NCBI GenBank assembly: GCA_964036045.1
Contig: OZ038378.1
Location: 82,894,001 to 82,958,000 of the forward strand
From: Eutreptiella sp. 'Long Island Sound 2002'
Taxonomy: Eukaryota; Protista; Euglenida
Direction: 5' to 3'
Length of the DNA stretch: 64,000 nucleotides
The translations under genes were made by a program, and so were the position numbers. The notes beneath the pieces were generated by a model that was given only the letters and a program-made list of their open reading frames with translations, was not told the origin of the DNA and ran no database searches. Positions 13,733 to 61,462 of this stretch are shown here, piece after piece (the stretch's first letter is position 1; each line of letters starts with the position of its first letter).

Positions 13733-15100
13733 GTGCTATGGTTCCTTCTCGCACGGTTAGATATTACACATTTCTTTGCAATGAAACGCCCGCCTTCTGG
13801 CCTCAAGGATGAGCAGGTGGGCCATTACTTGGCCACGTGGGCGCAATCACGCACCCTAGCACGGCGGCATTTCAACAACACCGTCCGATATGTGAACACC
13901 GCCACTTCTACCCAAACCACGGGTGAGGCATGCAAGGCCGCCGTTGAGGCATACACCGTCTCCCTAATCCCCCCCACGGTGATGTGTGAACTTGTGCTCG
14001 GCATGTGGGCCCCCAAGTCGTTGTGGAGGACCCTCTTAGAGCTCTACACGCTCCGTAAGTTTGAGTACCACCGCACTGTCCCCGGTGGCCCCTACTGCCA
14101 TCCTATTTGCACCGTGCGGGACTTCCAAGCCCGTTGCCACGAGTTCGTGGAATTGGATCCCCCCCTTGCCACGGTGTTGCGCAAGGCCACCGGGATCTCA
14201 TGGCCCTTCGCCTCATGGGTCAAATGCATCCTCTCCCGGCCGGGCTTGGTGCGGTCAATCAACCGCGCTTTCTCATTGACGTTCTTCGTCCGGGGGGATG
14301 CCTACCGCGTGGTCGGGGGCAATTCAAACCAACTCACCATCTCCTTGGCCAACTTCGACCGCTTGGCCCGCTCCCCCGCGGGGCGTTAGGTGTTGAGCAT
14401 GGCCACTTGCGATGATAAGGCCATGGACACCCTTGGGACGTTGTGGAAGACCAAATGGGAGGTACTCCTCTCACCTAGTGCCTTTCACTCGTTCTAGTTT
14501 TGTCCTAGTTAGCCTCGATGTTCCATGTTCAATGAGGTGATATGGAATGTCCAAAAGAAGACTTGGGAGGGTAGTGCTATCCCGCGGACAATGGAGGGTG
14601 ATAAGGCCCACTACACGGCCTTCCTCCTTCGGACACCTTCTTTCCAACCCGCTGGCTACAATACACAGCGGATTTTGCTATTGCCATGGGCGTGGGTCGT
14701 CTTGTGCATCTTGCACTTGATAATTGCCATGGGCCGCTGGTTGAGGGGAGTTTGTCGACCGGGAGGCCAGGGCGTCATCCCCTCGCTTCCTCAAGACCTG
14801 AAAGCTCTCCTATCGGAGAGGCGTGCAATTTGGATTGTTTCTGGGTCGCCTTCCCCAGACGCGGAAGAAGCGGCCAATTTTTTTTAGGTATGGCCGGATA
14901 TTTCTAGGCGCATCAGCATTGGGCCGAGCAGGACCAAGTGCAAGGCCATCGCGAAGCTGTGGGGCCTGCCGCAGGCCCTGTATTGTACATTTCAAGGCCC
15001 CTAACTCATTGAACCGTGCCTTCGTGGCAAAGGATTTCTGCCAGCAAAGTAGTCTTGGTACAACATCATGGTATCTACCGGGCCCTTGCCTTGTTGGGGA
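13733..15100 (+). pseudogene. Decayed DDE-type transposase (family T2, copy 1) with a phase-0 GT-AG intron at 14462-14512
   Basis: FFVRGDAY (D1), MEGDKAH (D2), LCILH (C/DxxH-like), SPDAEEA (candidate E); TAG at 14387 where the paralogue has Trp; homologous over ~230 aa to the minus-strand ORF at 26500-24700. Transposase identity is inferred from motif layout. Confidence 0.65.
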
Positions 15101-15119
15101 CCTAGGAGAGGACGAAATA

Positions 15120-15625
15120 GCTATGCAACCCCTATATTCTCGTAGGTCCCCAACGCCCACCGCGGAGAAAGAACCAGAAGTGGCTGCCTCACATCTTGGG
15201 GGCCCAAAGGAGGGCGGGATGGCTACGCAACCCCTGCATTCTCTAGAGTCCCCAACGCCAACCGCAGGGAGAAAATCAGAATTGGCAGCCTCTCCCCTAA
15301 TTTCTCAGGCGCCAAGAAGAGGGCGAATTGCTACGCAACCGCTGCATTACTGGCGGTCCCGAACGTCAAGCGTTGGGAGAAAATGAGACGTGGGTGCCTC
15401 GCACCGTGCCTTTTGGGGCCCCCATAAGAGGATGGAATGGGTATGTAACCCCTACATTCTCTGGGGTCCCCAACGCCAAGCGCAGGGAAAAAACAGAAAT
15501 GGTTGCCTCATCCGTGACTTCTCAGGGGTCTACAAAAGGGGGAACTGCTACGTAACCCCTACATTCTTGGGGGTCCCCAACAGCAGACACGGGGGAAAAG
15601 TTAGAAGTGGTTGCCTCCAGCCCGC
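15120..15625 (+). repeat. ~108-bp minisatellite, 5 copies
   Basis: gctaYgYaaccc starts at 15120, 15222, 15330, 15440, 15547 (periods 102-110). Confidence 0.9.
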
Positions 15626-35100: not shown

Positions 35101-35929
35101 CAAGCACAAGTTGCGCATAGCAACTTTTGTTTTTTCCGGATGAGGGGGGGGGGGGGCAGAGGCAGCAATGTCAGTGACGGCTACAGTGACAGTGACACGT
35201 GCTGCCTTCTCACACCCCAGCTTCATGTATTTCTAACCCGCGTGAGCCTCATCAGAAGAAACCAGAGGAAATCATGGCTGACAAAGAGGCATTGCATCGA
35301 GGGCGCCAACACCGGCGAGTAACGCGAACGTGGGCCTTGCTGACGACGGCGGCCACGGTCATTGCCGTGTTACAGGCCGGGAGCGAGGTGGGGCGAAAAG
35401 CCGTGGACCCCACGCTGGCCCGACAACGGCCGGATACGGCTGGATACCCACGATGCTGCACCGCCTTGCAGTGCTAGACGGTGCCCACTGCAGGCATCGC
35501 AATCATGGTCGTGATCATGGCAGCCGCACGGGGCGCGCACCAGGGCGAGGAGTGCGTGGGCGCGGACCGCATCGCTGAAGTTAGCACGGACCAGGGCACC
35601 CAAGAGCCCGAGACAGCCCGGCTTAGCAGCCTTCCTATACCAAGGCACTACGTGGAGACGGATGAGGCAAGCGAGAGTACAATGCCCCACGCGGCCGTCA
35701 CGGGCACAAACAGCCTGACCACGGATGCCCCGCCCCAGCTGTTTCGGGGGATACCCAACACAGTGGCTGGTATAGCCGCGGAGCAGCGGGGCCTTTTGAC
35801 AGGTGGAGGGGGGGAGACCGGGACAATGGGTAGGCTGAGACGGAGGCGGCGGACGACGGCATCAATGAAACTACGGTACAGGGCCGAGTGGAAGCATAGG
35901 ACAGCGCACAGCTGGAGGCACAAGAGCGC

Positions 35930-36160
35930 CGCTGCATCTTCATCAACACGGGGCCAAAAATCATCGCGGTCCACCTGCAGCCGGGGCACACGCTGCTGGA
36001 CCATGTGCGGGACCAAGTAGAAGGAAGGGAGGGAATCGCCACGGAACATCAACGCTTCATGTACACGGGGAAGCAGCTGTTCAAAGGTGACCTCACCTTG
36101 GAGGACTACGGCGTGACAGAGAAGTGCACGCTGCACGTCCTGGGGCGAGTGAGGGGAGGC
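35930..36160 (+). CDS. Ubiquitin-like domain ending RVRGG, fused upstream of Gag
   Basis: VRDQVEGREGIATEHQRFMYTGKQLFKGDLTLEDYGVTEKCTLHVLGRVRGG|M aligns to ubiquitin KEGIP..QQRLIFAGKQL....TL.DY.I....TLHL..RLRGG. Confidence 0.92.
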
Positions 36161-37350
36161 ATGCCGGAATCGGCAGAGATGGCTCATCCAACAGCAAGCG
36201 GCACCGCTTGGCGTTCGAGAACCCGATGGACATTGAGGCAGCGGGCTCAACCCCCTGTACGCGCAGTGGAAGGTGTGGCTCGAGACATGCGCGCCGATCG
36301 CAACCGCCTTCCTCGCGCAGGAGGCCACGGCAGCAGAGCCGCTTGGGTATCGAGAGAGAGCATCACGCCAAGGGCTCAGCGGGAGTGCAGGAGATGGTAC
36401 ACTGGGCGCCACCAAACAAGCCGGATCACGCAGTGCTGCTGGCGTGGGCAGCGCCTATGAGAAGGCCAAGCGATACAAGGTGGACCCGCTGCAGGGGAAG
36501 TGGGTCGAGGCGCCGAAACCGCCGCAAGGGCAGCCGCAGGATCAGCCACGAAATGCGCCACAGGTGGACCCCGTACAAAAGGAAATCGTAGACGTGGAAG
36601 CCCAGCTTGCAAAGCTGACAATGCCTAAGATCCCCCTATGCTCGGAGGAGCAGGTCAAGGCCGTCAGTGACAAGGCCCTGCAGGCAGGGATGGAGACAGA
36701 TTTTGTGGCGGCACTGCAAGCATATGGGGCGACACCAATGGCAAGGCCAGAAGATGCGGCAAAGGCGGGAGAGGTACTACGCGCGGCGGTGTGGACAACC
36801 CTGTACCTGACTGTGACCACACGAGCGCCACGGCTAGCCCCGCAACCCGCGCCCATGGCACCAGTGGCAACTATGGCCCACCAGCAGGTGATCCCCGTCT
36901 TCCAGGCGGTCCCCCAGGTACCACTCCAGCAAATGGCACGCACGCACTTGCCCCACCGGGGGCGTGCTACAGGTGCGGAATGTACGGGCACTGGTCCAGA
37001 GACTGTGTGACGGCGGCCTGCATCCCACAACAGCCCACCACACAAATGCTGCAAGCACAAGCAGCGCAGTGGCCGCAGGCCACACAGGTGCCACAGGCCC
37101 ACACAGCCCAAGCTTCGGTGCCCCCCCCCCCCCGTACGGGGGAGTACACACAGGTGGGGGCTCAGACAATTTACACGGCGCAGACGATGGGGCGACAATA
37201 TGATGCGTCCGGGCCCCCGCCTTACCCCTGCAGCAGATGCCACGGCAACCACTTGAGCTGGCAGCCAGGCCCCGCACGACAGCCAGGCGTGCCACCACAA
37301 CCCCAACCCCAACCACAGCCCCAATCCCAACCCCAGCAGTGGGCTAAGCG
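36161..37350 (+). pseudogene. Gag-like ORF (frameshifted) with a CCHC zinc knuckle
   Basis: CYRCGMYGHWSRDC at 36965-37006 (CX2CX4HX4C); second partial finger CSRCHGNH; Q/P-rich. Confidence 0.85.
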
Positions 37351-37457
37351 CACCGGGAGAGCCAGGAGCCACAGGGGACGACCCTGGCGCAAACGACGGC
37401 ACAGCAATCCAGGTACGCTGTCTGCCCACCTCCCGGGACGCACTCACAGCAAGGGAC

Positions 37458-38867
37458 GTGGCGACAGAACCGGGTGCACTGGCAGTCAGAGCCTGGGCGG
37501 AGGGCACCACACGAAACTGGCGCCGCGACTTGCAACGCGTTGGCAGGACAGACACCGACCTTGACGCCCCCTCGGCACTGGCCAAGCACCTCACCATGCT
37601 GGCAGCGCAAGGACGACGGTGCGCCACGCTTAGAGGTGTTGTATCCAGCGTCCGAATTCGTGAGACCCCGGGCATCTTCGACACGTTGGTTAATCCACTC
37701 CACTGGGCCATATGCAAGGCAGCCGACCGGGCCTTCACACACCCACCACCGCGACCAATCTTGGCCAATGCGCACCCACTGCAGGTACTGGACGCACGTA
37801 CATCGGGGCTGTTTGGCACAGGAGTCGTGGTGCTGGCCTGTCTGGGGACCGCCCTGTGCTGGCGCGTCAGTGAAGTCGCTTCACAGCGGCCAACAGACCT
37901 GGCGACACCCAGGAGCGTGGCCTTCTATGACCAAAAGACCCAACGCAGGTGGATCACGGCACGGCTAAGCCACTGGAGCGAGGCGTGGAGAAAACGCCTG
38001 CACGCCATTGTTCAGCGCAGGCCGGGTTGGATCCCACTATTCGCCTCGACCGCTGAAATCCAGCACGCCCTACGAGTTCTACTCATGGGCACAATGTGGC
38101 ACTCGGTGGCCTGGCACGCCTTCCGCAGGCTAGGGGCAGCGGCACTGGTTGCCACGGGGGCAGCCATGGCAGCCACGGCCCGGTGGGGAAGGTGGAAGCC
38201 CGAACGCCAAGCGGCAGAGTACGCCACACCCCCGCTCGACTGGGAGTGGGAACTCCCTGCCCTGCTCCCCTGGCCAGCACCCGGAGGTGGAGCCACGCTG
38301 CACGCAACGTCGCAGATGGAAATCTGGCCAACGGCAGCCATGGGTGGTGAGCCCTCCGTGAGAGCGAAGGACATAGCGCCCATACCAATCGTCATATCCG
38401 ACTCCAGCGACGACACCGACGACGGGGTATTCGGACCCGCTGTACAGGCTGATGGAGTGTGCGCCACACAACGCCACTGCCAACAGCCAGGAACCAACTC
38501 GGGATCTGCCAGTGGGACGCGCCGCCCCGCAAGTGGAGCGCCGCACAGTACGCGTCTGGATGCGAACCAGGTGTGCCCTCCGCCGAAGACCACCAGCAGG
38601 CCGATGCAAGTGCCAGGGGCAGCCATCCGTCGAGGATACACCGCCCGAGATGAGCCCGCTGGGGGAGCACACAACCCGAGGCAAGTGCGGAGACGCACTG
38701 CTAGCGCACAAGCAGGCAGCAACAGTCAAACTCTCGTCGCGACTCCGAGTGCACGAGCGCAGAGTCATGGACCTGCTACGGCTCTGGGGGCACACGGCCT
38801 CACTCTGGATCTAGGACAAGCCTCTGGCGCCGGAAGTGAAGAGGGCGGACCTACAGCTGCTGCATGA
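37458..38867 (+). CDS. Tyrosine recombinase (469-aa open frame)
   Basis: WRVSEV (R), DQKT (K), WHAFRR (HxxR), GRW, AEYA (Y); helical N-terminal domain; low-complexity C-terminal tail. Confidence 0.9.
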   Translation: MATEPGALAVRAWAEGTTRNWRRDLQRVGRTDTDLDAPSALAKHLTMLAAQGRRCATLRGVVSSVRIRETPGIFDTLVNPLHWAICKAADRAFTHPPPRPILANAHPLQVLDARTSGLFGTGVVVLACLGTALCWRVSEVASQRPTDLATPRSVAFYDQKTQRRWITARLSHWSEAWRKRLHAIVQRRPGWIPLFASTAEIQHALRVLLMGTMWHSVAWHAFRRLGAAALVATGAAMAATARWGRWKPERQAAEYATPPLDWEWELPALLPWPAPGGGATLHATSQMEIWPTAAMGGEPSVRAKDIAPIPIVISDSSDDTDDGVFGPAVQADGVCATQRHCQQPGTNSGSASGTRRPASGAPHSTRLDANQVCPPPKTTSRPMQVPGAAIRRGYTARDEPAGGAHNPRQVRRRTASAQAGSNSQTLVATPSARAQSHGPATALGAHGLTLDLGQASGAGSEEGGPTAAA

Positions 38868-38869
38868 AA

Positions 38870-39930
38870 GTCTGCATGAACTGGTGGTAAGCGGGCCACC
38901 AGAGGACGCCAGTTCGCCGGTGTTGGGTGAGGGCCGCAAAGTGTCATTGCAGCTGGCAGCTAAGGGTCTGGGGAGCGCGTGATCAGTACAAGTGCCGCCA
39001 ACTCTGTGGGAGCAGTGGGGAGACCCGTGCTTCGAATGGGCTGGCCGCAACGCGCCGACCCAGCCCCACTCGCGATGCCCCAAGGCGCAGGCCCTGCTCC
39101 CCGCCCTGGAGCGCCAGGGCGCTGTCGAGGGCACATGGAAGGCACCCAATGCCTCTGTTTTTGCTAACTGGAAGAGCGAGGCTAAGGCCTCCCTCATCCT
39201 CAACATGAAAGCTTTCAACCACAAATACGCCTGCAAGGCCCGGCGCTTAAGGCTGCCCACCGTGGAGGGCCTGGCTGACCTGCTGCGTGCAGTGGGGGGG
39301 GGGGTCGGCGACAAAATTTGACCTTGCAAATGGCAACTGGTCGATCCACCCCCCCCCCCCCCCCACCTGACCAGGGCGATCAGGGTAGAAGTGGGCGAGA
39401 GGCCCTTTGCCATTGTACGTGTGCTCTTCGGTTGGCACCAGGCCCCAGGGCTGGTGCAACACCTCATCGCGACAGTGATTGCCCATGTCGACCCAGGAGG
39501 TGTCGTGGTGGTGCAGTACCTGGATGACATCCTGGTGGTTGGGAAGTAGAAGCAGGAGATCCGCAAGGTTACGCACGATGTGACAAGCGCGCTGAGTAAG
39601 GCAGCTTTCCTGACTGAGCATCCTTGCCCCTATGGCTGAAGTCACGTGGATGGGTAAGACAGTGAACGCAGAGGCAGGCAGAATCCAGCCCAGACCAGTG
39701 GCTGTGGCAGATTGCGTGACCAGGTGGATACGCTTCGCGGTGCCGCTGACGCAAGTATCCCTCAGGAGGCTCTTGGGCCGTCTGGTCCGGCTTGGACGAC
39801 CTGGCAGCACAGCGGCCGCTTTGTGGAGTGGCGCACGAGCTTGGCTGCATTTTGAGCCGCGCTGGGTGCCCAGGGCACCACCGAACCTCTTGGGGGGCAT
39901 TTCGGAGGGTTTGTGCTGCGCGCTGCGTGG
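38870..39930 (+). pseudogene. DIRS-type reverse transcriptase, disrupted
   Basis: LILNMKAFN, PFGWHQAPG, QYLDDILVVG (YLDD at 39517-39528); several stops and frameshifts, one next to a C14 run. Confidence 0.9.
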
Positions 39931-39934
39931 ATAG

Positions 39935-40330
39935 GTGCCTGCCTGCACCCAGCACACGTTCACACGCGCACCCTGCCTGTTTGTGGTTGCCGCGCAAGGC
40001 CCAGGAGGCTACTGGGTAAGCATCCTCGACCATACAGGACCATGGATCAGGCGCTGCCCACGCTGGATAACATCGCAGCAGTCAGCTGAGCTTTGGGGAG
40101 TCCTTGCAGGGTTGGAAAGGGCAAACGGGCCAACAAACCTGTTTGTGGATAACACAGGAGCATTGAGCACCGCACTCCGGGGCAGGGCTGGTATCGCACT
40201 ACCGGAGCGGCAACGCATCATGAGGTGACTAGCGCACAGGTTACGGTGGCAAGGGGGGGGCACTGCAGTTGCACTACGTACCCTCTCCACTGAACCCGGC
40301 AGACCCGGTTTCCCGCTTGTTAGGTCGACA
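39935..40330 (+). pseudogene. DIRS-type RNase H, one in-frame stop
   Basis: QQSAELWG, LFVDNTGA, HYVPSPLNPADPVSR. Confidence 0.88.
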
Positions 40331-43300
40331 GTCGGCCAAGGACATTGTCGTGCAGGCCAGGGCCAGGGAAGCAGTGTTTTTGAACTGCGCACGGACTGCA
40401 TCGTGGGGCAGCATACCTGATAGAGACATGCAGCAATCGGTTATGTGTGGCTCGTACGGATGGCAGCCCAGGCATTGGCGGCATTAATGGCGGCAATTCA
40501 GGCGCGAGGGCAGGTGGGTGTTGGGTGGTGCCTGGGCTTTCAGGGACCCGTGCATCTGTCGTAGTTCGCTACTTTGCCTGTTTTTATGACTCGTTCGCGA
40601 TCGCGAGGGCGCAAGAAGCGAGGCCGTCGCGGTGGCCGCCGACAACGCAAGTTTGTGCATGCGGCGGCGCGCTCTGGCGCTCATCCGTTCTGTGTGTGCG
40701 CATCGTGTGGAAGGCCGCGATGTGTTGCACGTTTTTCTCGGTGGAGCAGCGAGGTTGCTGTTTGCCGTGCTGTTTCCGGACCGTGAAGCGCCGGAAGTGC
40801 CGAGTGCCGCTGTGTGGGACATCGGTGACCGCTTGCGCATTGTCCCGGACCAGGGCGTTACAACCACAGGCATCAGGGATGTAAAGGGACCAGGACGACA
40901 CCATTGTAGGCACCGATGGCGCCTACTGATGGCGGAAGGGCCTGTCTGCCCGTCCCTGAGCACACAACACCGGGAAGGCGGACAGGCCCTTCCGTATTTG
41001 TGGGTGCAAGGGCGCCCTGCCCTCGTGTGGCGAGTGGCTGCCATGGTCGCACCCTGAGTTGGGCCTGGGGCCAACAGAACCACCGGTTGGGACACGGAGT
41101 GCCTGGCGCCGTGGACGTGAGCCGCATCGGCCGGGCCCACTGTCCTTACGCTTTCAGCTTGCGTGCCTCGCGTGCCTGCTACCCTCTTTCCGGTTTGGAC
41201 TGGCACGAGCCTGATTTCGCACGCTTTAATTCAGAATGCCCGGCGCCGTGGACGTGTGCTGCAGTGACCGGGCCCACTGTGTTTGCACTTTTTGTCTGCG
41301 TGCTCCGCGAGTTCGGACAAGCACGCACCTGCTGTTTGCAGGGTGCTGTGTGCTGGGTGCCAGACATGTGCCACGGCTGGGTGTATCAGGCAGGTGCCTC
41401 AGCTACCGACGGCCTCCACTCACCGGTGGCACCCACGGGCATACACATGCATACACGAGCACATATTTTCATTTCCCAGACGCAAATACCAGTTAGTGGA
41501 GTGTTGCAGTGTTGGCTTTGCATGTGTCAGTGCCAGTGTTCAGGGTAAAGGACAGGGCAGTGCAGAGCAGGGCCAGCAAAACACAAGTTGCGCATAGCAA
41601 CTTTTGTTTTGCCCGCTGAGGGGGAGGGGCAGAGGCGGCAATGTCAGTGACGGCTAAAGTGACAGTGACAGACCTCTGATGAGGCTAAGGCAGGTTAGAA
41701 ATACATCAAGCTGGGGTGTGAGCAGGCAACAGGTGGGTAGCATGTACCTCAGGCAATGACACCTCGTCTATTTCGGCGCCATGCGACAAGCGCGAGCATA
41801 TGTATGGCTCACATCATGGCCCAGACAGCCCCAGACGCAAATACCAGTCAGTGGAGTGTTGCATTGTTGGCTTTGCACGTGTCAGTGCCAGTGTTCAGGG
41901 TACAGGACACGGCAGTGCAGAGCAGGGCCAGCAAAACAACAAGAAGGGGAAGGCCAAGCCCCTTGCCAAGGCATGTGCCAAGATGCCATTTGAGCAAACC
42001 ACCCATGGACCTGGAGAATGCCGCGGATTTGGAGAGCATTGACAAGGGCCAGTAGCAAGCAATTGCAGCGCAGATTGAGGATGCGAACAACGTGGGATCT
42101 AGCGGACGAGGAGCCCCCGGGCTGAAGCGGAAACCCAAAGGCCCTGCCGTTACCATCCTTAGTGTGGCTCCGCTTGAGCAAGCTGCCCGGCGCACCCGGA
42201 GTGCAAAGCAGTAGGCTGAATGGGAGGACCTTTCAGTTGTGCTTTTTGGAGAACTGAATCTGATCGTACTGTTGCTGCCCTAACAATGTCTGCTAGTTTG
42301 CTGGGTTATCACACTCTACTTTCACTATCCACTGTGGAACAGGCTACCATAATGACACCCGTTCCCGAAATGCTCGAAACCGGTGTTAGATTTTTTCCTG
42401 TCATAGCACTGCTCTGTGATGCCCTACTGCACAATTTGGTCCTGAGTTCCACTGTGTGCTTTTGTTTTTCAACAGACAGGAACAATCATTTATAAACCAT
42501 AATCTGTACCCTTCAGCCATCTTTTTGGACTGCACGGACATATGACAATGTCCCTATCCCGTGTATTTGCACTTTAGTTCATTGCAGGAGGCACATGCTG
42601 TTTATCTTCGATGTGAGTTTCACCAACAGGGTCCTATGTCTGCTATATTGTTTCCACGTTGCACCTAGGAGTGCAAGATAACACTCTGTTTCACTGTTAA
42701 CCGTGAAACCGTCTCCCTTGCTGATGTCATTTGCTAGTTACAGTATTTTTCATGACAGATATGCAGGTGCACTGTGTGCACAAGTGCCCCACCTGTGTTT
42801 TGTGTTGCTCCTTTACATACACTCGTCTGTCACAAGAGGAACACGTTCGTGGCTGCACCTGACCCACAACCGCACATGGGATGGAATTGAGGGGGGGGTC
42901 TGGGGATGCAGTCCATCACACCTCAAGGCTTCTATGTCAATAGCGGTTTCACTGTTGACATACAAGCATTATGAAACATGGCCCCCACAATGCAGTTTTG
43001 GGGAATTGAATTTTTATGTCAGTATCACTGTTGGCCACACAAGCCAGAAATGAACCTTTTTGTCCGTTTTCGAGGTCCCCGTCGGCACGAGATGTCAAGT
43101 TCGTACCCGTAAGCTTCTTTTACTAATTCTGTCATGCAGGGCTCTGCAGAGCCCAGATGAAGTACATTGACCAATTTCAGCCGTCATATTACCAATTTGA
43201 CAGTTTTGGGCTCTGCAGAGCCCAGGATCCCACGGAATGCACATTTACGCCGTGCCAGATCGCTGTGACTTGGTGGATTGTTGAATCCTATTGCAACGTT

Positions 43301-48528: not shown

Positions 48529-49221
48529 AAGCCCCCCCGATCAACTTCAAATCCCCCCCCCCAATCAATTTCATAGCCCCCCCCATCAATTTCATAGGAC
48601 CCCCTATCAATTTTATAGCCCCCCCCCATCCATTTCATAGCCCTCCCCATATCTATTTCATAGCCCCCCCCCAAATTAATTTCATTTCACCCCCCATCAA
48701 TTTCATAGCCCCCCCATTGATTCCATACGCCCCCCTATCAAACTCATTGCCCCCCCCCAATCGATTTCATAGCCCCCCCCATCAATTTCATAGCCCCCCC
48801 CCCATCAATTTCGGAGCCCCCCCATCAATTTCATATGTCCCCCTATCAATTTTTTGCCGCCCCCCCATCCATTTCATAGCCCCCCCCAATATCAATTTCA
48901 TGGTCCCCCCCCATCCATTTCATAGCCCCCCCCTATCAATTTCATACACCCCCCCTATCAATTTCATAGCCCCCCCCCATCCATTTCATAGCCCCGCCAC
49001 ATCCATATTATAGCCCCCCTCCCTATCAATTTCATAGCCCCCCCCATCCATTTCATAGCCCCTCCTCCATCAATTTCATAGCCCCACCCCCATTAATTTC
49101 ATAGCCCCCCATCAATTTCATATGCCCCCCTATCAATTTCATCCCCCCCCCCCATCCATTTCATAGCCCCCCCAACATCCATTTCAAAGCCTCCCTCCCC
49201 ATCAAATTCATAGGCCCCCCC
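48529..49221 (+). repeat. ~19-21-bp tandem repeat (C5-8)ATCAATTTCATAG, roughly 33 copies
   Basis: Directly visible; unit length varies through the C-run. Confidence 0.97.
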
Positions 49222-52200
49222 ACATGGGAATTGGCGCAAAAGGTCGCGTCAATTATTTTGGGGGTCTAGACCCTCCTAGGAATTGACGCATAGGGTTGCG
49301 TCAATTATTTTGGGGGTCTAGACCCCCATAGGAATTGACGCATAGGCTCACGTCAATTATTTTGGGTGTCTAGATCCCCATAGGAGTTGACGCATAGGGT
49401 TGCGTCAATTTTTTGGGGGGTCTAGACCCCCCTAGGAATTGACGTATAGGGTTGTGTCAAATATTTTCGGGGTCTAGACCCCCCTAGGAATTGACGCATA
49501 GGGTCGCGTCAATTATTTTCGGGGTCTAGACCCCCATAGGAATTGACGCATAGAGTTGCGTCAATTTTTTTGGGGGTCTAGACCCCCATGGGAATTGACA
49601 CATAGGGTTGCGTCACTCATTTTGAGGGTCTACACCCCGATAGGAATTGACGCATAGGGTCGCGTCAAATTTTTTGGGGGTCTAGACCCCCATAGGAATT
49701 CACCCGCATAGGGTTGCGTCAATTTTTTTTGGGGTCGAGACTCTCCTAGGAATTGATGCGTAGGGTCGCGTCAATTATTTTGGGGGTCTAGACCCCCATT
49801 GGAATTGAGGCATAGGGTTGCGTCAATTTTTTTTGGGGTCTAGACCCCCATAGGAATTGACGCATAGGGTTGCGTAAATTTTTTTCGGGGTCTAGAGCCC
49901 CGCAGGAATTGACGCATAGAGTTGCGTCAAATATTTTGGGATCTAGACCCCCCTAGGAATTGATGCATAGGGTTGCGTCAATTATTTTGGGGGTCTACAC
50001 TCCCCTAGGAATTGACGCATAGGGTTGCGTCAATTTTTTGGGGGGTCTAGACCCCCCTAGGAATTGACGCATAGGGTTTCGTCAATTATTTCGGGGGTCC
50101 AGACCTTCATAGGAATTGAGGCATAGGGTTGCGTCAATTATTTTGGGGTCTAGACCCCCACAGGAATTGACGCATAAGGTTGCGTCACTTATTTTGAGGG
50201 TCTGGACCCCCATAGGAATTGATGAATAGGGTTGCGTCAATTGTTTTCGGGGGCTAGACCCCCTTACGAATTGACACATAGGGTGGCGTCACTTATTTTG
50301 AGCGTCTGGACCCCAATAGGAATTGACACATAGGGTCGCGTCAATTATTTTGGAGGTCTAGACCCCCATAGGAATTGACGCATAGGGTTGCGTCAATTGT
50401 TTTCGGGTCTAGACTCCCCTAGGAATTGACGCATAGGGTTGGGTCAATTATTTTGGGGGTCTAGATCCCCATAGGAATTGACGCATAGGGTCACGTCAAT
50501 TATTTTGGGGGTCTAGACCCCCATAGAAATTGATGCATAGGGTTGCATCAATTATTTTGGGGGTCTAGACCCCCCTAGGAATTGACGCATAGGGTCGCAT
50601 CAATTAATCTGGGGGTCTAGACCCCCATAGGAATGGACGCATAGGGTCGCGTCAATTATTTTGGGGGTCCAGACCCCCCTAGGACTTGACTCATAGGGTT
50701 GCGTCAATTATTTTTGGGGTCTAGACCCGCATAGGAATTGACGCATAGGGTTGCGTCAATTTTTTTTTGGGGTGCAAACCCCCATAGGAAGTGACGCACA
50801 GGGTTGCATCAATTATTTTTGGGGTCTAGACCCGCCCAGGAATTGACGCATAGGGTTTCGTCAATTTTTTTTGGGGTCTAGACCCCCCTAGGAATTGACG
50901 CGTAGGGTCGCGTCAATTATTTTGGGGTTCTAGACCCCCATAGGAATTCACACGTAGGGTCGCGTCACTTTTTTTGGGGTTCTAGATCCCCATAGGAATT
51001 GACGCATAGGGTTGCGTAAATTATTTTTGGGGTCTAGACCCCCCTAGGAATTGACGCATAGGGTCGCGTCAATTATTTTTGCGGTCTAGACCCCCATAGT
51101 AATTTACGCATAGGGTTGCCTAAATTTTTGGGCGTCTAGACCGCCATAGGAATGGGCGCATAGGGTTGCGTCAATTATTTTCGGGGTCTAGACCCCCCTA
51201 GGAATTGACGCATAGGGTTGCGTCAATCATTCTGGGGATCTAGACCCCGATAGGAATTGACGCATAGGGTTGCGTCAATTATTTTTGGGGTCTAGACCCC
51301 CCTAGGAATTGACGCATAGGGTCGGATCAATTATTTTGGGGGTCTAGACCCCCATAGGAATTGACGCGTAGGGTCGCGTCAATTGTTTTGGTGGTACAGA
51401 CCCCCACAGGAATTGACGCATAGTGTTGCGTCATGATATTGGTGGTTTAGACTCCTCTAGGAATTGACGCATAGGGTTGCGTCATTTTTTTTGGTGGTCT
51501 AGACCCGCATAGGAATTGACACATAGGGTTGCGTCAATTATTTTCGGGTTCTAGACCCCCACAGGAATTGACGCATAGGGTTGCGTCAATTTTTCCGGGG
51601 TCTAGACCCCCATAGGAATGGACGCAAAGGGTTGCATCAATTATTTTCGAGGTCTAGAGCCCCATAGGAATTTACTCATACGGTTGCGTCAATTATTTTT
51701 GGGGTCTAGACCCCCCTAGGAATTGACGCATAGGGTTGCGTCAAATTTTTTGGTGGTCTAGACCCGCATGGGAATTGACGCATAGGGTTGCGTCAATTTT
51801 TTTTGGGGTCTAGACCCCCATAGGAATTGACACACAGGGTTGCGTCAATTTTTTTGGGGGTCTAGACCCGCATAGGAATTGACGCATAGGGTTGCGCCAA
51901 GTTTTTTTGGGGTGCAAACCCCCATAGGAAGTGACGCATAGTGTTGCGTCAGTTATTTTTGGGGTCTAGACCCCCATAGGAATGGACACATAGGGTCGCG
52001 TCAATTATTTTGGGGGTCTCGACCCGCATAGGAATTGACGCATAGGGTTGCGTCAATAATTTTCGGGGTCTAGACCCCCATAGGAACTGACACATAGGGT
52101 CGCGTCAATTTCTTTCGGGGTCTAGACCCTCCTAGGAATTGACGCATAGGGTTGCGTCAATTTTTTTGGGTGTCTAGACCCGCATAGGAATTGACGCATA

Positions 52201-55200
52201 GGGTTGCGTCAATTATTTTGGGGGTCTAGACCCCCATAGGAGTTGATGCATAGGGGTGCGTAAATTATTTTGGGGGTCTGAACTTCCCCAGGAATTGACG
52301 CATAGGGTTGCGTCAATTTTTTTCGGGGTCTAGACCCTCCTAGGAATTGACGCATAGGGTTGCGTCAAATATTTTGGCGATCTAGACCCCCATAGAAATT
52401 GACGCATAAAGTGCGTCAATTATTTTGGGGGTCTAGACCCCCATAGGAATTGATGCATAGGGTTGCGTCAATTATTTTTGCGGTCTAGACCCCCATAGGA
52501 ATTGACGCATAGGGTTGCGTCAATTATTTTGGGGGTCTAGACCCCCCTAGGAATCGATGCATAGGGTTGCGCCAATTATTTTGGGGTCTAGACCCCCATA
52601 GGAATTCACGCATAGGGTCGCGTCAATTAATTTGCGGTTCTAGACCCCCCCAGGAATTGACGCATAGGGTTGCGTCAATCATTTTGGGGATCTAGACCCC
52701 TCTACGAATTGACGCTTAGGGTTGCGTCAATTATTTTCGGGGTTTAGACCCGCCTAGGAATTGACGCATAGGGTTGCGTCAATTATTTTGGGGGTCTAGA
52801 CCCTCCTAGGAATTGAGGCATCGGGTTGCGTCAATTTTTTTTGGTGGTCTAGACCCCCATAGAAATTGACGCATAGGGTTGCGTCAATTATTTTGGGGGT
52901 CTAGACCCTCCTAGGAATTGAGGCATCGGGTTGCGTCAATTTTTTTTGGGGTCTAGACCCTGCTAGGAATTGACGCACAGGGTTGCGTCAATTTTTTTGG
53001 GGGTCTAGACCTTCATACGAATTGACGCATAGGGTCGCGTCAATTTTTTTGGAGGTCTAGACCCCCATACGAATTGACGCATAGGGTTGCGTCAATTTTT
53101 TTCGTGGTCTAGACCCTCCTAGGAATTGATGCATAGGGGTGCGTAAATTATTTTGGCGGTCTGAACCCCCCCAGGAATTGACGCATAGGGTTGCGTCAAT
53201 CGTTTTGGGGGTCTAGACCCCCCTAGGAATTGACGCATAGGGTTGCGTCAATTTTTTTGGCGATCTAGACCCCCCCAGGAATTGACGCATAGGGTTGCGT
53301 CAATTTTTTTTTGGGTCTAGACCCCAATAGGAATTGACACATAGGGCCGCGTCAATTATTCTGGGGGTCTAGACCCCCCTAGGAATTGACGCATAGGGTT
53401 GCGTCAATTATTTTGGGGATCTAGACCCCCATAGGAATTGACGCATAGGGTTGCGTCAATTTTCTTTGGGGGTCTAGACCCCCGTAGGAATTGACGCATA
53501 GGGTTGCGTCAATAATTTTTGGGGTCTAGACCCCCCTAGGAATTGACGCATAGTGTTGCGTCAATTGATTTTGGGGTTTAGACCCCCATAGGAATTGACG
53601 CATGGGGTTGCGTCAATCATTTTTGCGGTTTAGACCCCCATAGGAATTGACACATAGGGTTGCGTCAATTATTTTGGGGGTTTAGACCCCCCTAGGAATT
53701 GATGCATAGGGTTGCGTCAATAATTTTGGGGGTCTAGACCCCCATAGGAATTTACACATAGGGACGCGTCAATTAATTTGAGGTTCTAGCCCCCCCCAGG
53801 AATTAACGCATAGGGTTGCGTCAATTTTTTTGGGGGTCTAGACCCCCCTAGGAATTGACACATAGGGTTGCGTCCATTATTTTGGGGGTCTAGACACCCA
53901 TAGGAATTGATGCATAGGGTTGCCCGAATTATTTTTGGGGTCTAGACCCCCCTAGGAATTTACGCATAGGGTTGCGTCAATTATTTTGGGGGTCTAGACC
54001 CCCGTAGGAATTGACGCATAGGGTTGCGTCAATTTTTTTTGGGGTCTAGACCCCCCTAGGAATTGACGCATAGTGTTGCGTCAATTGATTTTGGGGTTTA
54101 CACCCCCATAGGAATTGACGCATAGGGTCACGTCAATTATTTTCGGGGTCTAGACCCTCCTAGGAATTGACGCATATTGTTGCGTCAATTTTTTTGGGGG
54201 TCTAGACCCCCATAGGAATGGACGCATAGGGTTGCGTCAATTATTTTGGCGATCTAGACCCCCATAGGAATTGACGCATAGGGTTGCGTCAAATTTTTTT
54301 TTTGGGTCTAGACCCCAATAGGAATTGACACATAGGGTCGCGTCAATTATTCTGGGGGTCTAGACCCCCATAGGAATTGACGCACAGGGTTGCGTCAATT
54401 GTTTTGGGGGTCTAGACCCCCCTAGGAATTGACGCATAGGGTTGCGTCAATTACTTTGGGGATCTAGACCCCCATAGGAATTGACGCATAGGGTTGCGTC
54501 AATTTTTTTGGGGGTCTAGACCCCCGTAGGAATTGACGCATAGGGTTGCCTCAATTATTTTTGGGGTCTAGACCCCCCTAGGAATTGACGCATAGTGTTG
54601 CGTCAATTGATTTTGGGGTTTAGACCCCCATAGGAATTGACGCATAGGGTTGCGTCAATAATTTTTGCGGTCTAGACCCCCATAGGAATTGACACATAGG
54701 GTTGCGTCAATTATTTTGGGGGTCTAGACCCCCCTAGGAATTGATGCATAGGGTTGCGTCAATCATTTTGGGGGTCTAGACCCCCATAGGAATTTGCACA
54801 TAGGGACGCGTCAATTAATTTGAGGTTCTAGCCCCCCCCAGGAATTAACGCATAGGGTTGCGTCAATTTTTTTGGGGGTCTAGACCCCCCTAGGAATTGA
54901 CACATAGGGTTGCGTCCATTATTTTGGGGGTCTAGACACCCATAGGGATTGATGCATAGGGTTGCCCGAATTTTTTTTGGGCTCTAGACCCCCCTAGGAA
55001 TTTACGCATAGGGTTGCGTCAATTATTTTGGGGGTCTAGGCCCCCGTAGGAATTGACGCATAGGGTTGCGTCAATTATTTTTGGGGTCTAGACCCCCCTA
55101 GGAATGGACGCATAGTGTTGCGTCAATTATTTTTGCGGTCTTGACCCCCATAGGAATTGACACATAGGGTTGCGTCAATTATTTTGGGGGTCTAGACCCC

Positions 55201-57362
55201 CCTAGGAACTGATGCATAGGGTTGCGTCAATTTTTTGGGGGTCTAGACCCCCATAGGAATTTACCCATAGGGACGCGTCAATTAATTTGCGGTTCTAGCC
55301 CCCCCCAGGAATTAACGCATAGGGTTGCGTCAATTTTTTGGGGGTCTAGACCCCCCTAGGAATTGACGCATAGGGTTGCATCAATTCTTTTTGGGATCTA
55401 GACCCCCATAGGAATTGAGGCATAGGGTTGCGTCAATTATTTTGGGGGTCTAGACCCCCGTAGGAATTGACGCATAGGGTTGCGTCAATTATTTTGGGGG
55501 TCTAGACCCCCCTAGGAATTGACGCATAGGGTTGCATCAATTATTTTGGGGGTCTAGACCCCCCTAGGAATTGATGCATAGGGTTGCGTCAATAATTTTG
55601 GCCGGCTAGACCCCCATAGGAATTTACACATAGGGACGCGTCAATTAATTTGCGGTTCTAGACCCCCCCAGGAATTGACGCATAGGGTTGCGTCAATTTT
55701 TTTGGGGGTCCAGACCCCCCTAGGAATTGACGCATAGGGTTGCGTCAATTATTTTGGGGATCTAGACCCCCATAGAAATTGACGCATAGGGTTGCGTCAA
55801 TTATTTTTGGGGTCTAGACCCCCCTAGTAATTGACGCATAGGGTTGCGTCCATTTTTTTCGGGGTCTAGACCCCAATAGGAATTGACGCGTAGGGTCGCG
55901 TCAATTGTTTTGGTGGTCTAGCCCACACAGGAATTGACGCATAGTGTTGCGTCATGATATTGGTGGTTTAGACCCCTCTAGGAATTGACGCTTAGGGTTG
56001 CGTCAATTGTTTTCGGGGTTTAGACCCCCCTAGGAATTGACGCATAGGGTTGCGTCAATTATTTTTGGGGTCTAGACCCCCATAGGAATTGACGCATAGG
56101 GTTGCATCAATTATTTTCGGGGTCTAGACCCTCCTAGGAATTGACGCAAAGGGTTGCGTCAATTTTTATGGGGGTCTAGACCCCCATAGGAATGGACGCA
56201 AAGGGTTGCGTCAATTATTTTCGGGGTCTAGACCCCCCTAGGAATTGATGCATATGGTCGCGTCAATCAATTTGCGGTTCTAGACCCCCCCAGGAATTGA
56301 CGCATAGGGTTGCGTCAATTTTTTTGGGGGTCTAGACCCCCATAGGAATTGACGCATAGGGTTGCGTCAATTATTTTGCGGGTCTAGACCCCCATAGGAA
56401 TCGACGCATAGGGACGCGTCAATTATTTTCGGGGTCTAGACCCCCATAGGAATTGACGCGTAGGGTCGCGTCAATTGTTTTTGTGGTCTAGACCCCCACA
56501 GGAATTGACGCATAGTCTTGCGTCATGATATTGGTGGTTTAGACCCCTCTAGGAATTGACGCTTAGGGTTGCGTCAATTATTTTCGGGGTTTAGACCCCC
56601 CTAGGAATTGACGCATAGGGTTGCGTCAATTTTTTTGGTTTCTAGACCCCCATAGGACTTGACGCACAGGGTTGCGTCAATTATTTTGGGGGTCTTGACC
56701 CCCATAGCCATTTACGCATAGGGTCGCGTCAATTATTTTGGGGTTCTAGACCGCCACAGGGATTGCCGCAGAGGGTTGCGGCAATTATTTTGGGGGTCTG
56801 GACCCCCCTAGGAATTGACGCATATGGTTGCGTCAACTATTTTGGGGGTCTAGACCCCCATAGGAATGGACACATATGGTTGCATCGATTATTTTGGTGG
56901 TCTAGACCCCCTAGGAATTGACGCATAGGGTTGCGTCGATTATCTTGGGGGTCTAGACCCCCCTAGGAATTGACGCATAGGGTTGCGTCAATTATTCTGG
57001 GGGTCTAGACCCCCATAGGAATTGACGCATAGGGTGGCGTCACTTATTTTGGGGGTCTCGACCCCCATAGGAATTGACGCATAGGGTTGCGTCAATTTTT
57101 TTCGGGGTCTAGACCCCCATAGGAATTGACGCATAGGGTCGCGTCAATTTTTTTCGAGGTCTACACCCCCATAGCAATTGACGCATAGGGTTTCGTCAAT
57201 TTTTTTGGTGTCCAGAGCCCCATAGGAATTGACACATGGGGTCGCGTCAATTTTGTTGGGGGTCTAGACCCCTGCAAGAATTGACACATAGGGTTGCGTC
57301 ACTTATTTTGAGCGTCTGGACCCCAATAGGAATTGACGCATAGGGTTGCGTCAATTATTTTG
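49222..57362 (+). repeat. ~52-bp satellite array 1 (about 155 copies)
   Basis: Consensus GGGGTCTAGACCCC-CATAGG-AATTGACGCA-TAGGGT-TGCGTCAATT-ATTTTG; period 52 (49261 to 49313). Confidence 0.99.
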
Positions 57363-60442: not shown

Positions 60443-61462
60443 GGGTCTAGACCCCCATAGGAATTGACGCATAGGGTTGCGTCAATTATATTGTGGGCCT
60501 AGACCCCCTTCGAATTGACGCATAGGATTGCGTCAATTTTTTTGTGGGTCTAGACCCCCATAGGACTTGACGCACAGGGTTGCGTCAATTTTTTTGGGGG
60601 TCTAGACCCCCATAGGAATTGATACATAGGGTTGCGTCAATTTTTTGGGGGTCTAGACCACTCTAGGAATTGACACATAGGCTGGCGTCAATTATTTTTG
60701 GGGTCTAGACCCCCTAGGAATTGACGCATAGGGTTGCGTCAATTATATTGGGGGTCTAGACCCCCTATGAATTGACGCATAGGGTTGTGTCATTATATTA
60801 ATGCTCTAGACCACCCTAGGAATTGTCGCATAGGGTTGCGTTAATTCTAATGGGGGTCTAGCCCCCTTAGGAATTGACGCCCGGGGGTGCGTCAATTTTT
60901 TTGGGCTCTAGACCCCCCTAGGAATTGACGCATAGGGTTTTGTCTTTATCTTGGTGGTCTAAACCCCCATAAGAATTGACGCATAGGGTTGCGTCAATTA
61001 TTTTGGGGGTCTAGACCCCGATACGAATTGACGCCACACGTTTCGTCAATTATTTTGGGGGTCTAGACCCCCCTAGGAATTGACGCATAGGGTCGCGTCA
61101 ATTATTTTGGGGGTCTAGACCTCCCTAGGAATTGACGCATAGGGTTGCGTCAATGCTTTTGGGATTGTAGACCACCCTAGGAATTGTCGCATAGGGCCGC
61201 GTTCATTATTTTGGGGGTCTAGACCCCCATAGGAATTGACGCATAGGGTTGCGTCAATGATTTTGGGCGTCTAGACCCCCATAGGAATTGACGCATGGGG
61301 TCGCGTCTATTTTTGAGGGGGTCTAGACCCCCATAGGAATTGACGCATAGGGTTGCGTCAATTATTTTGGGTGTCTAGACCCCCATAGGAATTGACGCAT
61401 AGGGTTGCGTAAATTCTTTTGGGGGTTTAGACCCCCTAGGAATTGACGCATAGGCTCGCGTC
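60443..61462 (+). repeat. ~52-bp satellite array 2 (about 20 copies)
   Basis: Same consensus and orientation as array 1. Confidence 0.99.

What the first reader, a model, noticed from the sequence alone, without database searches (positions are those of the whole stretch)
35930..37350. Ubiquitin-like domain fused N-terminally to Gag, ending RGG|M
The Ubl ends in RVRGG directly followed by Met, the layout of ubiquitin fusion precursors that host deubiquitinases cleave after GG. YR retrotransposons lack their own protease, so this could borrow host processing to release Gag, as ubiquitin insertions do in cytopathic pestivirus polyproteins (analogy), and would also yield a free, potentially conjugatable Ubl.
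Basis: partly seen in the sequence, partly recalled or inferred. Interest (0 to 1): 0.8.

Follow-up and report, generated by a model that had tools for sequence, protein, structure and literature searches.

The report
Ubiquitin-like domain placed before retrotransposon Gag
A family of jumping genes in a euglenid alga has picked up a ubiquitin-like domain and placed it flush against the original first amino acid of its Gag protein, so the cell's own ubiquitin-cutting enzymes could release Gag, a trick known from some cattle viruses but apparently not from retrotransposons.

Summary
Window 35933-36160 (+) encodes a 76-residue ubiquitin-family domain (Pfam PF00240, E 9e-13; ubiquitin itself in PDB, E 6e-11) that ends RVRGG and is followed at once by ATG.

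The window copy is a decayed retrotransposon (35102-41938). It has two frame slips just after GG-Met-Pro-Glu. Related copies carry N-extension, Ubl, GG|Met and CCHC Gag in one ORF (L004: 570 aa).

Across 19 distinct copies, 16 keep GG and 15 keep GG|Met. The Ubl is under purifying selection (median dN/dS 0.35; Gag 0.12-0.17).

Two corrections:
- The Ubl is internal. A fast-evolving 215-320-aa extension with two hydrophobic stretches precedes it.
- Three 5'-complete sister elements in the same genome have the same Gag-recombinase-RT layout and no Ubl. They start Gag at about the post-GG Met, right after the terminal repeat.

So the Ubl block was added flush against Gag's ancestral start. Gag never needed releasing from Pol, which sits in a +1 overlapping ORF.

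Best reading (about 0.55, cleavage not shown): host deubiquitinases cut after GG and yield native Gag plus an extension-Ubl protein.

The host is a euglenid (Eutreptiella), not human. I found no literature precedent.

The parts
35102..35256 (+). Left terminal repeat A1 of a split-direct-repeat element
   Evidence: 35102-35197 repeats directly at 41579-41670 (88.5%). The same A block flanks ORF1 in L002 and L004-L009.
35274..35932 (+). N-terminal extension of ORF1 (decayed here). It starts at ATG 35274, has an in-frame stop at 35475-35477, changes frame before the Ubl and has a TAG at 35897-35899.
   Evidence: tblastn to the L004 ORF1 and coordinates. The frame is open from the same ATG into the Ubl in P0016, P0017, P0019, P0022 and L005. 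Other frames carry 4-12 stops. dN/dS is about 0.8. There are two hydrophobic peaks (KD 1.5-1.9). No Pfam family matches.
35933..36160 (+). Ubiquitin-like domain, 76 residues, tail G-R-V-R-G-G
   Evidence: PF00240 at E 9.4e-13; ubiquitin in the PDB at E 6e-11; median dN/dS 0.35 across copies; a family HMM finds it in every 5'-complete family copy.
36155..36163 (+). GG|Met junction (GGA GGC ATG), the proposed deubiquitinase cleavage site and ancestral Gag start
   Evidence: GG|M in 15 of 19 distinct copies. Sister families L010, L011 and L014 start Gag at a Met in the same short tail before the K-R-x-R-L-A-F motif.
36161..37564 (+). Gag-like part of ORF1. It is broken here by frame slips at 36170-36192, 36217-36248 and about 36950. 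CCHC knuckle at 36965-37006, second Cys/His motif at 37223-37267, ORF1 stop at 37562-37564.
   Evidence: dN/dS 0.12-0.17. The AF2 model core has pLDDT 86-94 but no PDB fold match.
37200..38867 (+). Start of ORF2, the tyrosine-recombinase-like part (open ORF 37458-38867). Motifs: C-W-R-V-S-E at 37857, W-H-A-F-R-R at 38112, G-R-W...Y at 38187-38222.
   Evidence: The HxxR-22-W-8-Y spacing is identical to Cre. No significant Pfam or PDB profile hit. ORF2 lies +1 to ORF1 in 7 of 9 copies.
38704..40304 (+). Reverse transcriptase (Y-L-D-D at 39517) and RNase H-like motifs (40142, 40272). Decayed, with stops at 39319-39321, 39547-39549 and 39637-39639 and two frame changes.
   Evidence: The L006 homologue is one 635-aa ORF that runs from the recombinase C-terminus through RT, with RVT_1 at E 9.6e-14.
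41475..41938 (+). Right end: B1 41475-41583, A2 41579-41829, B2 41830-41938
   Evidence: B1/B2 are 95% identical. The same B-A-B order occurs in L005-L008. About 90 bp inside A2 is inverted in this copy only.

Best explanation
The window holds an old, broken copy of a retrotransposon from a euglenid alga. Its layout is terminal repeat A1, then ORF1, then ORF2 (tyrosine-recombinase-like, reverse transcriptase, RNase H), then repeats B1-A2-B2.

In this family ORF1 has three parts:
- a poorly conserved 215-320-residue N-terminal extension with two hydrophobic stretches;
- a 76-residue ubiquitin-like domain with a conserved G-R-V-x-G-G tail;
- directly after GG, the Met-Pro-Glu start of a CCHC Gag-like protein.

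Sister families in the same genome begin Gag at that Met. The family therefore acquired about 0.9 kb of coding sequence whose 3' end is a ubiquitin unit set flush against Gag's original start codon.

Proposed mechanism: ribosomes start at the upstream ATG. Host deubiquitinases, which cut ubiquitin-X fusions after GG, then split the product. This gives Gag with its ancestral N-terminus and an extension-Ubl protein that ends in GG. Ubiquitin would act as a host-operated cleavage module that lets the element carry an extra protein in front of Gag on one mRNA.

Shown: architecture, conservation, selection, and distribution among families. Inferred: translation from the upstream ATG, the cleavage, and any role of the extension.
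For: - Ubiquitin-family identity: PF00240, E 9.4e-13; ubiquitin, E 6e-11, alignment through G-G-M.
- One ORF across extension, Ubl and Gag in L004, L006, L007 and L009.
- GG in 16 of 19 and GG|M in 15 of 19 distinct copies. G71, R72, G75, G76, M and P are invariant in the 9-row junction alignment, while the residue at position 74 varies (R, Q, K, T, W).
- Median dN/dS: Ubl 0.35, first 109 Gag codons 0.17, rest of Gag 0.12, extension 0.79. Synonymous distances between copies reach above 1.
- The extension's frame is stop-free in three diverged copies (p-distance 0.13-0.33) while the other five frames carry 1-12 stops. The chance of staying open under neutral drift is 0.7-14%.
- L010, L011 and L014 have the same Gag-recombinase-RT order (Gag 31-36%, recombinase 28-38% identity; RT 47-57% in L010 and L011) and no Ubl in any frame.
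- Their Gag ATG lies 5 nt (L010) or 42 nt (L011) after repeat A1, with stops shortly upstream.
- The Ubl-bearing Gags form one branch with 100/100 support.
[quoted passage not shown] The diverged Ubl FUBI is cut from eS30 by USP36 (PMC8354635, PMC10611586).
Against: - No cleavage, protein or transcript evidence. All family hits come from one ENA assembly and none from the euglenid transcriptome sets the collection also holds.
- The Ubl is only about 38% identical to ubiquitin. Its beta1-beta2 loop is one residue shorter around Leu8 and it has Met at the Ile44 position, so recognition by general deubiquitinases is not assured (and the sequence itself).
- Three of 19 copies lack GG (P0023, P0017, P0029). 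One of these, P0029, carries a more divergent Ubl.
- The extension is nearly unconstrained (dN/dS about 0.8), so the extra protein may have little function.
- Every sampled copy is broken somewhere and A1/A2 identity within copies is 88-97%. The family may be extinct.
- The full-length AF2 model was uninformative (pLDDT 29).
Confidence: 0.55

Rival explanations
1. The Ubl is a permanent, uncleaved domain of a longer Gag precursor. It would serve as a docking surface for ubiquitin receptors, proteasome shuttles or trafficking factors, as in Ubl-domain proteins.
For: The Ubl is internal to the ORF, as in many Ubl-domain proteins. It has drifted far from ubiquitin at the Leu8 loop and Ile44 position, which could weaken deubiquitinase recognition.
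Against: Integral Ubl domains generally lack the GG end (established knowledge). Here G75-G76 and R72 are kept while neighbouring position 74 varies freely. The flush junction with the ancestral Gag Met would be a coincidence.
Confidence: 0.2
2. Gag is still made mainly from its own ATG (36161 in the window), as in the sister families, from a shorter or trans-spliced mRNA or by leaky scanning. The extension-Ubl would be an upstream add-on whose in-frame continuity with Gag is incidental or regulatory.
For: The post-GG Met matches the start used by Ubl-less relatives and is kept in 16 of 19 copies. Euglenozoa trans-splice their mRNAs (established knowledge). The extension is weakly constrained.
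Against: No copy with an intact junction has a stop between GG and ATG. A separate upstream ORF would not need the Ubl tail, yet the tail is conserved and the Ubl is under selection. No transcript data exist either way.
Confidence: 0.15
3. The Ubl is a functionless passenger: a host ubiquitin fragment captured once and carried along by copying.
For: All sampled copies are decayed and come from one genome. No relatives turned up in JGI metagenome or IMG/VR contigs.
Against: Ubl dN/dS is 0.13-0.35 in divergent pairs with dS up to above 1, with a third-position excess of changes (626/503/813). The neighbouring extension shows 0.79 and an even spread. The domain persisted through diversification into sub-lineages (L001/P0041/P0044; L007/L008; L004/L005).
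Confidence: 0.05

Closest known systems
Ubiquitin insertions in cytopathogenic pestivirus (BVDV) polyproteins
   Same: A complete host-type ubiquitin unit sits directly upstream of the protein to be released. The junction is GG followed by the first residue of that protein. Processing is attributed to cellular ubiquitin C-terminal hydrolases (PMC5381556). A capture origin from host ubiquitin RNA is plausible here too, because the alignment runs through G-G-M as at a polyubiquitin junction.
   Different: Here the carrier is a genomic retrotransposon of a protist, not an RNA virus. The insertion is an old, selected family trait (dS up to above 1) rather than a recent recombinant. The Ubl has diverged to about 38% identity. 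It brought or gained a long N-terminal extension. Cleavage is untested.
Cellular ubiquitin and Ubl fusion genes (polyubiquitin, Ub-ribosomal protein fusions, FUBI-eS30)
   Same: An Ubl ending in GG is fused in frame to an unrelated protein and removed by deubiquitinases. FUBI shows that a strongly diverged Ubl is still cut, by USP36 and USP16 (PMC8354635, PMC10611586).
   Different: In those genes the Ubl is the N-terminus of the precursor. Here it is internal, behind a 215-320-aa extension, and the partner is a retroelement Gag.
2A-like 'ribosome skipping' peptides in non-LTR retrotransposons of trypanosomes (L1Tc, Ingi)
   Same: These are protease-less retroelements of Euglenozoa that split their translation product with a borrowed device rather than their own protease (PMC3708506).
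   Different: 2A works inside the ribosome and needs no host enzyme. The device here would be a folded 76-residue domain cut by host enzymes. No 2A motif is involved.
VIPER / Ngaro-type tyrosine-recombinase retrotransposons
   Same: The ORF order is gag-like, recombinase, RT/RNase H. Split direct repeats follow the A1...B1-A2-B2 pattern. Gag has a CCHC box. No protease or integrase is present (PMC6681497).
   Different: The host is a euglenid, whereas VIPER is described as kinetoplastid-only (PMC3783388). The recombinase has no significant profile match. No described member has a ubiquitin domain in ORF1 ('ubiquitin' occurs 0 times in PMC6681497).

Membership tests
Ubiquitin family, processable (type-1) Ubl | Sequence match to the ubiquitin beta-grasp family | tested here: met
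   PF00240 at E 9.4e-13, above the gathering score. Ubiquitin chains in the PDB at E 6e-11.
Ubiquitin family, processable (type-1) Ubl | C-terminal Gly-Gly, exposed by cleavage of a precursor | tested here: met
   GG is present in the window (36155-36160) and in 16 of 19 copies. That it becomes exposed by cleavage is not shown.
Ubiquitin family, processable (type-1) Ubl | Cleavage after GG by a deubiquitinase or Ubl protease | not testable with these tools
   Needs expression with a GG-to-AA control.
Ubiquitin family, processable (type-1) Ubl | Ubiquitin recognition surface (Leu8, Ile44, His68, Val70; Arg72, Leu73) | tested here: inconclusive
   From the alignment and the copies: R72, a hydrophobic residue at 73 and H68 are kept, position 44 is Met, and the Leu8 loop is one residue shorter.
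Ubiquitin family, processable (type-1) Ubl | Activation by E1 and conjugation to targets | not testable with these tools
   Only the GG end and R72 are seen.
Tyrosine-recombinase retrotransposons (order DIRS in the wide sense) | Reverse transcriptase | tested here: met
   RVT_1 at E 9.6e-14 in the L006 homologue. Y-L-D-D at window 39517.
Tyrosine-recombinase retrotransposons (order DIRS in the wide sense) | Tyrosine recombinase with the R...HxxR...Y catalytic residues | tested here: inconclusive
   Conserved C-W-R-V-S-E, W-H-A-F-R-R and G-R-W...Y motifs, with HxxR-22-W-8-Y spacing equal to Cre. No Pfam hit at E up to 10 and no PDB profile hit. hhalign against Cre and lambda Int is not significant.
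Tyrosine-recombinase retrotransposons (order DIRS in the wide sense) | RNase H after RT | tested here: inconclusive
   Only motifs are seen (F-V-D-N-T-G at 40142; H-Y-V-P-S-x-x-N-x-A-D at 40272). No Pfam hit on the pieces.
Tyrosine-recombinase retrotransposons (order DIRS in the wide sense) | No aspartic protease and no DDE integrase | tested here: met
   No such Pfam domain in any ORF scanned, nor in the precomputed domains of the called genes of 10 loci.
VIPER / Ngaro-type (split direct repeats) | A1...B1-A2-B2 terminal repeats | tested here: met
   Window A1 35102-35256, B1 41475-41583, A2 41579-41829, B2 41830-41938. The same pattern occurs in L005-L008 and L010.
VIPER / Ngaro-type (split direct repeats) | VIPER-type ORF order: gag-like, recombinase, RT/RNase H | tested here: met
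VIPER / Ngaro-type (split direct repeats) | RT or recombinase groups with VIPER/TATE in a phylogeny | not tested
DIRS1-like in the strict sense | Inverted terminal repeats with an internal complementary region, and a methyltransferase domain | tested here: not met
   The repeats are direct and split. The one inverted piece is a copy-specific inversion. No methyltransferase domain was found in the family elements' ORFs (their rows).
Retroviral-type Gag | CCHC zinc knuckle and position as first ORF | tested here: met
   PF00098 at E 6e-5 (window) and 3.5e-5 (P0018). First ORF after A1.
Retroviral-type Gag | Capsid-like fold | tested here: inconclusive
   The AF2 model from 26 sequences has mean pLDDT 68.8 and a helical core at 86-94. 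Foldseek against the PDB gives no match with E below 1.

The most novel reading that the evidence does not exclude
The retrotransposon has turned ubiquitin into more than a cleavage site. After the cut, the extension-Ubl protein, which keeps R72 and a free GG, would be activated by the host E1 and conjugated to targets such as Gag particles, chromatin or membranes (through its two hydrophobic stretches). That would make it a transposon-encoded, conjugatable ubiquitin-like modifier that carries its own cargo.
Probability: 0.1. Interest if true: 0.85.

Novelty: new variant of a known kind. Interest (0 to 1): 0.62.

Why it matters
Retroelements without a protease are thought to get by with separate ORFs or, in trypanosome LINEs, with 2A peptides. 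A ubiquitin unit set flush against Gag's start would be a third solution, in which the host's deubiquitinases do the processing.

It would be a stable, selected, genomic counterpart of the ubiquitin insertions seen in cytopathogenic pestiviruses. It is also directly testable with one expression construct and a GG-to-AA control.

The case shows how a retroelement can add a new protein in front of Gag without disturbing Gag's N-terminus.

Separately, it places VIPER-like (gag, recombinase, RT/RNase H, split-repeat) elements in euglenids. Several families there, with and without the Ubl, form a natural comparison set.

Tried and rejected
- AF2 on the full-length ORF1 (10-sequence alignment) gave pLDDT 28.8 and was unusable.
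- The Gag model from 26 sequences was decent, but Foldseek against the PDB gave nothing below E=1. 'Gag' therefore rests on position and the CCHC knuckle.
- For the recombinase, Pfam on 7 members at E up to 10 gave no hit and a PDB profile search gave only noise. hhalign against P1 Cre and lambda Int was not significant. Only the motif spacing is informative.
I left them out rather than forcing them.
- L003 (39% recombinase relative) is 5'-truncated next to a microsatellite and says nothing about Ubl presence.
- Host clues from Rfam on the window and 11 loci, tRNA scan and the dinoflagellate spliced leader were all negative. The host came instead from an exact protein match.
- Scans with the Ubl-Gag junction profile found nothing in JGI metagenome contigs or IMG/VR.
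- Literature searches for a ubiquitin domain in YR-retrotransposon or retrotransposon ORF1/gag found nothing relevant.
- One paper search failed on a term that was too short.
- I considered and rejected a Gag-recombinase polyprotein. It occurs only in L001 through an indel, while 7 of 9 copies have ORF2 in the +1 frame.
- I considered and rejected DIRS1-type inverted repeats. The inverted 61-90 bp in the window's A2 is specific to this copy.
Full report
**1. What is in the window**

On the + strand, frame 2, codons 35933-36160 read a 76-residue domain that starts C-I-F-I-N-T and ends G-R-V-R-G-G. The GG codons are 36155-36160 and an ATG follows at 36161-36163.

- The domain matches Pfam ubiquitin PF00240 at E 9.4e-13, 48 bits against a cut-off of 25.
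- In the PDB its best partners are ubiquitin itself, at E 6e-11 for a single unit. There are 27 identities in 71 columns, and the alignment runs through G-G-M as at a polyubiquitin junction.
- Downstream lie a CCHC knuckle (36965-37006; PF00098, E 6e-5) and a second Cys/His motif (37223-37267).

**2. State of this copy**

The element spans 35102-41938.
- Left repeat A1 is 35102-35256.
- At the right end, B1 is 41475-41583, A2 is 41579-41829 and B2 is 41830-41938.

This copy is old, with A1/A2 identity of 88.5%, and it is broken in several places.
- The upstream part of ORF1 has a stop at 35475-35477 and a TAG at 35897-35899.
- The reading slips twice just after GG-M-P-E (between 36170-36192 and 36217-36248) and again before the knuckle.
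- The RT has three stops and two frame changes.

In the window itself, Ubl and Gag are not one ORF.

**3. The family**

Searching with the intact 469-aa recombinase-like ORF (37458-38864) found relatives at 72-81% identity, all on Mb-scale contigs of one ENA assembly, ERZ25074135. I fetched nine related loci.

- Every locus that keeps the 5' part (L001, L002, L004-L009) has the Ubl in the same place.
- In L004 a single 570-aa ORF runs from an ATG just after A1 through a 215-aa extension, the Ubl, GG|Met and the Gag-like body to the knuckle.
- L006, L007 and L009 give the same picture.
- Adding protein fragments gives 19 distinct copies. Fifteen read GG|Met, one has GG then a frameshift, one has K-R-V for x-G-G, and two have deletions that remove the tail.
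- In a 9-row alignment of the junction, L69, G71, R72, G75, G76, M and P are invariant. Position 74 varies (R, Q, K, T, W).

The alignment tool prints a majority line on its own, which I did not use.

**4. Selection**

Pairwise Nei-Gojobori estimates on codon alignments of the open ORFs:

| Region | Median dN/dS | Changes at codon positions 1/2/3 |
|---|---|---|
| Extension | 0.79 | 586/628/676 |
| Ubl | 0.35 (0.13-0.30 in the most divergent pairs, dS up to above 1) | 626/503/813 |
| First 109 Gag codons | 0.17 | not recorded here |
| Rest of Gag | 0.12 | not recorded here |

All copies have also decayed neutrally since insertion, so these values overestimate dN/dS in the active lineages. The Ubl is a selected part of the element. 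It is less constrained than Gag and far more than the extension.

The extension nevertheless looks translated.
- Its frame is stop-free from the same ATG in five copies (P0016, P0017, P0019, P0022, L005), while other frames carry 4-12 stops.
- Most indels are multiples of three.
- A neutral simulation keeps such an ORF open in only 0.7-14% of trials.
- It has two hydrophobic peaks (Kyte-Doolittle 1.5-1.9 over 19 residues) kept in three diverged copies, and no Pfam match.

**5. Sister families lack the Ubl**

A profile of the post-GG Gag, searched against 1.84 billion representatives, found 69 proteins. I used this search because the novelty claim rests on absence of relatives. Beyond the family fragments, there are distant Gag relatives (about 21-40% identity) whose predicted proteins begin within a few residues of the conserved K-R-x-R-L-A-F motif.

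I fetched three of them. All lie in the same assembly.

| Locus | Protein | Gag start and context |
|---|---|---|
| L010 | P0043 | Young and complete: A1 8855-8996, A2 15028-15167 (about 97% overall), B1/B2 identical. Gag ATG at 9001, 5 nt after A1, stop 10 codons upstream. |
| L011 | P0046 | A1 8809-8959, ATG at 9001. |
| L014 | P0053 | Nearest Ubl-less Gag in the tree. Stop 4 codons before its ATG. |

- All three have Gag followed by the recombinase-like ORF, and L010 and L011 also show RT. Identities to the window family are 31-36% (Gag), 28-38% (recombinase) and 47-57% (RT, in L010 and L011).
- A family Ubl HMM run with all filters off finds no credible Ubl in any of their six frames; the best is one 24-residue, 13.7-bit match on the opposite strand of L014.
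- L010's Gag starts M-P-G-G and the family's post-GG sequence starts M-P-E-A-G-G.
- In a Gag tree the Ubl-bearing sequences form one branch with 100/100 support.

The simplest history is a single gain of the extension-Ubl block between A1 and the ancestral Gag start codon.

**6.

The cleavable-fusion layout is strengthened, because a module meant to be cut off cleanly would sit exactly at Gag's native first residue. The motive offered, that protease-less elements need help to free Gag, is not supported.
- ORF2 lies in the +1 frame relative to ORF1 in 7 of 9 copies, with a fixed 181 nt between the PQ repeat and the recombinase motif. It may have its own ATG (M-R-P-G-P, window 37203).
- Only L001 fuses ORF1 and ORF2, through an indel.
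- In L006 the recombinase C-terminus, RT and the start of RNase H are one 635-aa ORF.

Gag therefore needs freeing only from the block that brought the Ubl. The released Ubl would not be free: it would carry the 215-320-aa extension.

**7. Mechanism**

My best reading is translation from the upstream ATG, followed by host deubiquitinase cleavage after GG. This gives native Gag plus extension-Ubl-GG.
- The chemistry has precedents. [quoted passage not shown]
- The diverged Ubl FUBI is cut from eS30 by USP36 and USP16 (PMC8354635, PMC10611586).
- Trypanosome LINEs use 2A peptides for a similar purpose (PMC3708506).

I put this at about 0.55. Nothing shows cleavage. The Ubl is only about 38% identical to ubiquitin, with changes at the Leu8 loop and the Ile44 position. 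All sampled copies are defective.

The rivals are an uncleaved docking domain (0.2), Gag made from its own ATG on a shorter mRNA (0.15) and a functionless passenger (0.05, contradicted).

**8. Classification**

- RT is solid (RVT_1 at E 9.6e-14).
- The split repeats A1...B1-A2-B2 and the gag, recombinase, RT/RNase H order match VIPER/Ngaro-type elements as described in PMC6681497.
There are no Pfam or PDB profile hits and hhalign against Cre is not significant.
- However, the best hhalign alignment is the catalytic segment, and the HxxR-22-W-8-Y spacing equals Cre's H289, R292, W315 and Y324.
- DIRS1-type inverted repeats and a methyltransferase are absent.
- The Gag fold has no PDB match.

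**9. Host**

A V-ATPase proteolipid gene on L008 (same assembly) is 100% identical to UniRef100_A0A7S4GHG9 of Eutreptiella gymnastica. Its 90% cluster holds Euglena sequences. The genome is therefore that of a euglenid alga or a very close relative. It is not human, and not an animal or a crop.

The family's proteins appear only under the ENA source, not in the MMETSP or EukProt transcriptome sets that the same collection holds for euglenids. There is thus no sign of expression.

**10. Novelty and limits**

Full-text searches found no report of a ubiquitin domain in a YR-retrotransposon or retrotransposon ORF1/gag. That library is incomplete, and Repbase reports are not covered. Scans of JGI metagenome contigs and IMG/VR found no further Ubl-Gag junctions.

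Everything rests on one genome and on sequence inference. I rate it a new variant of known kinds: a YR-type retrotransposon combined with ubiquitin-fusion processing. Interest is 0.62.

Noticed in passing
window 49219-57362 and 60443-61462: An 8.1-kb array of a 52-bp unit (about 157 copies, 85% match), with the same unit again 3 kb further on. The unit contains an internal palindrome, so each repeat could form a hairpin.
   Followed up: no
window about 41673-41762 (inside repeat A2): A roughly 61-90-bp piece of the right-hand A repeat is inverted relative to A1 of this copy and relative to both A repeats of L005-L008. This is a copy-specific inversion inside the terminal repeat, of unknown cause.
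   Followed up: partly
window 37200-37564; L001:10193-10718; L002, L004-L006, L008, L009: ORF2 (recombinase-RT-RNase H) overlaps the end of ORF1 in the +1 frame in 7 of 9 copies, at a fixed 181 nt from the PQ repeat. L001 has the two fused by an indel. Whether ORF2 is reached by frameshifting or from its own ATG (M-R-P-G-P) is open.
   Followed up: partly
window and loci L001-L011, L014: The gag, recombinase, RT/RNase H order with A1...B1-A2-B2 repeats is the VIPER layout, described as kinetoplastid-only (PMC3783388 abstract). It occurs here in several families of a euglenid genome. No phylogeny was done.
   Followed up: partly
L010:8855-15349: A Ubl-less sister element that looks young (terminal repeats about 97% identical overall, near-identical in the ungapped blocks). 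It carries an internal block of 170-bp tandem repeats and duplicated segments (11735-12958).
   Followed up: no
window 37223-37267 and the same place in P0043, P0045, P0020: A second conserved Cys/His motif (Y-D-A-S-G-P-P-P-Y-P-C-S-R-C-x-x-x-H-x-S-W-Q) lies about 70 residues after the CCHC knuckle. It is shared by Ubl-bearing and Ubl-less Gag families.
   Followed up: no
window 1076-1921 (+), 11174-11836 (+); L003:1-4326: Other retroelement remnants are present: an RVT_1 ORF and an RNase H-like ORF in the window, and a LINE-like ORF of more than 1750 aa with an Exo_endo_phos domain in L003. The region is transposon-rich.
   Followed up: no
P0029 (contig not fetched): One divergent copy has a clearly different Ubl sequence and lacks the ten residues R-V-R-G-G-M-P-E-A-G, so the Ubl joins the Gag tail directly. 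It could be a decayed copy or a sub-lineage with an uncleavable Ubl.
   Followed up: no
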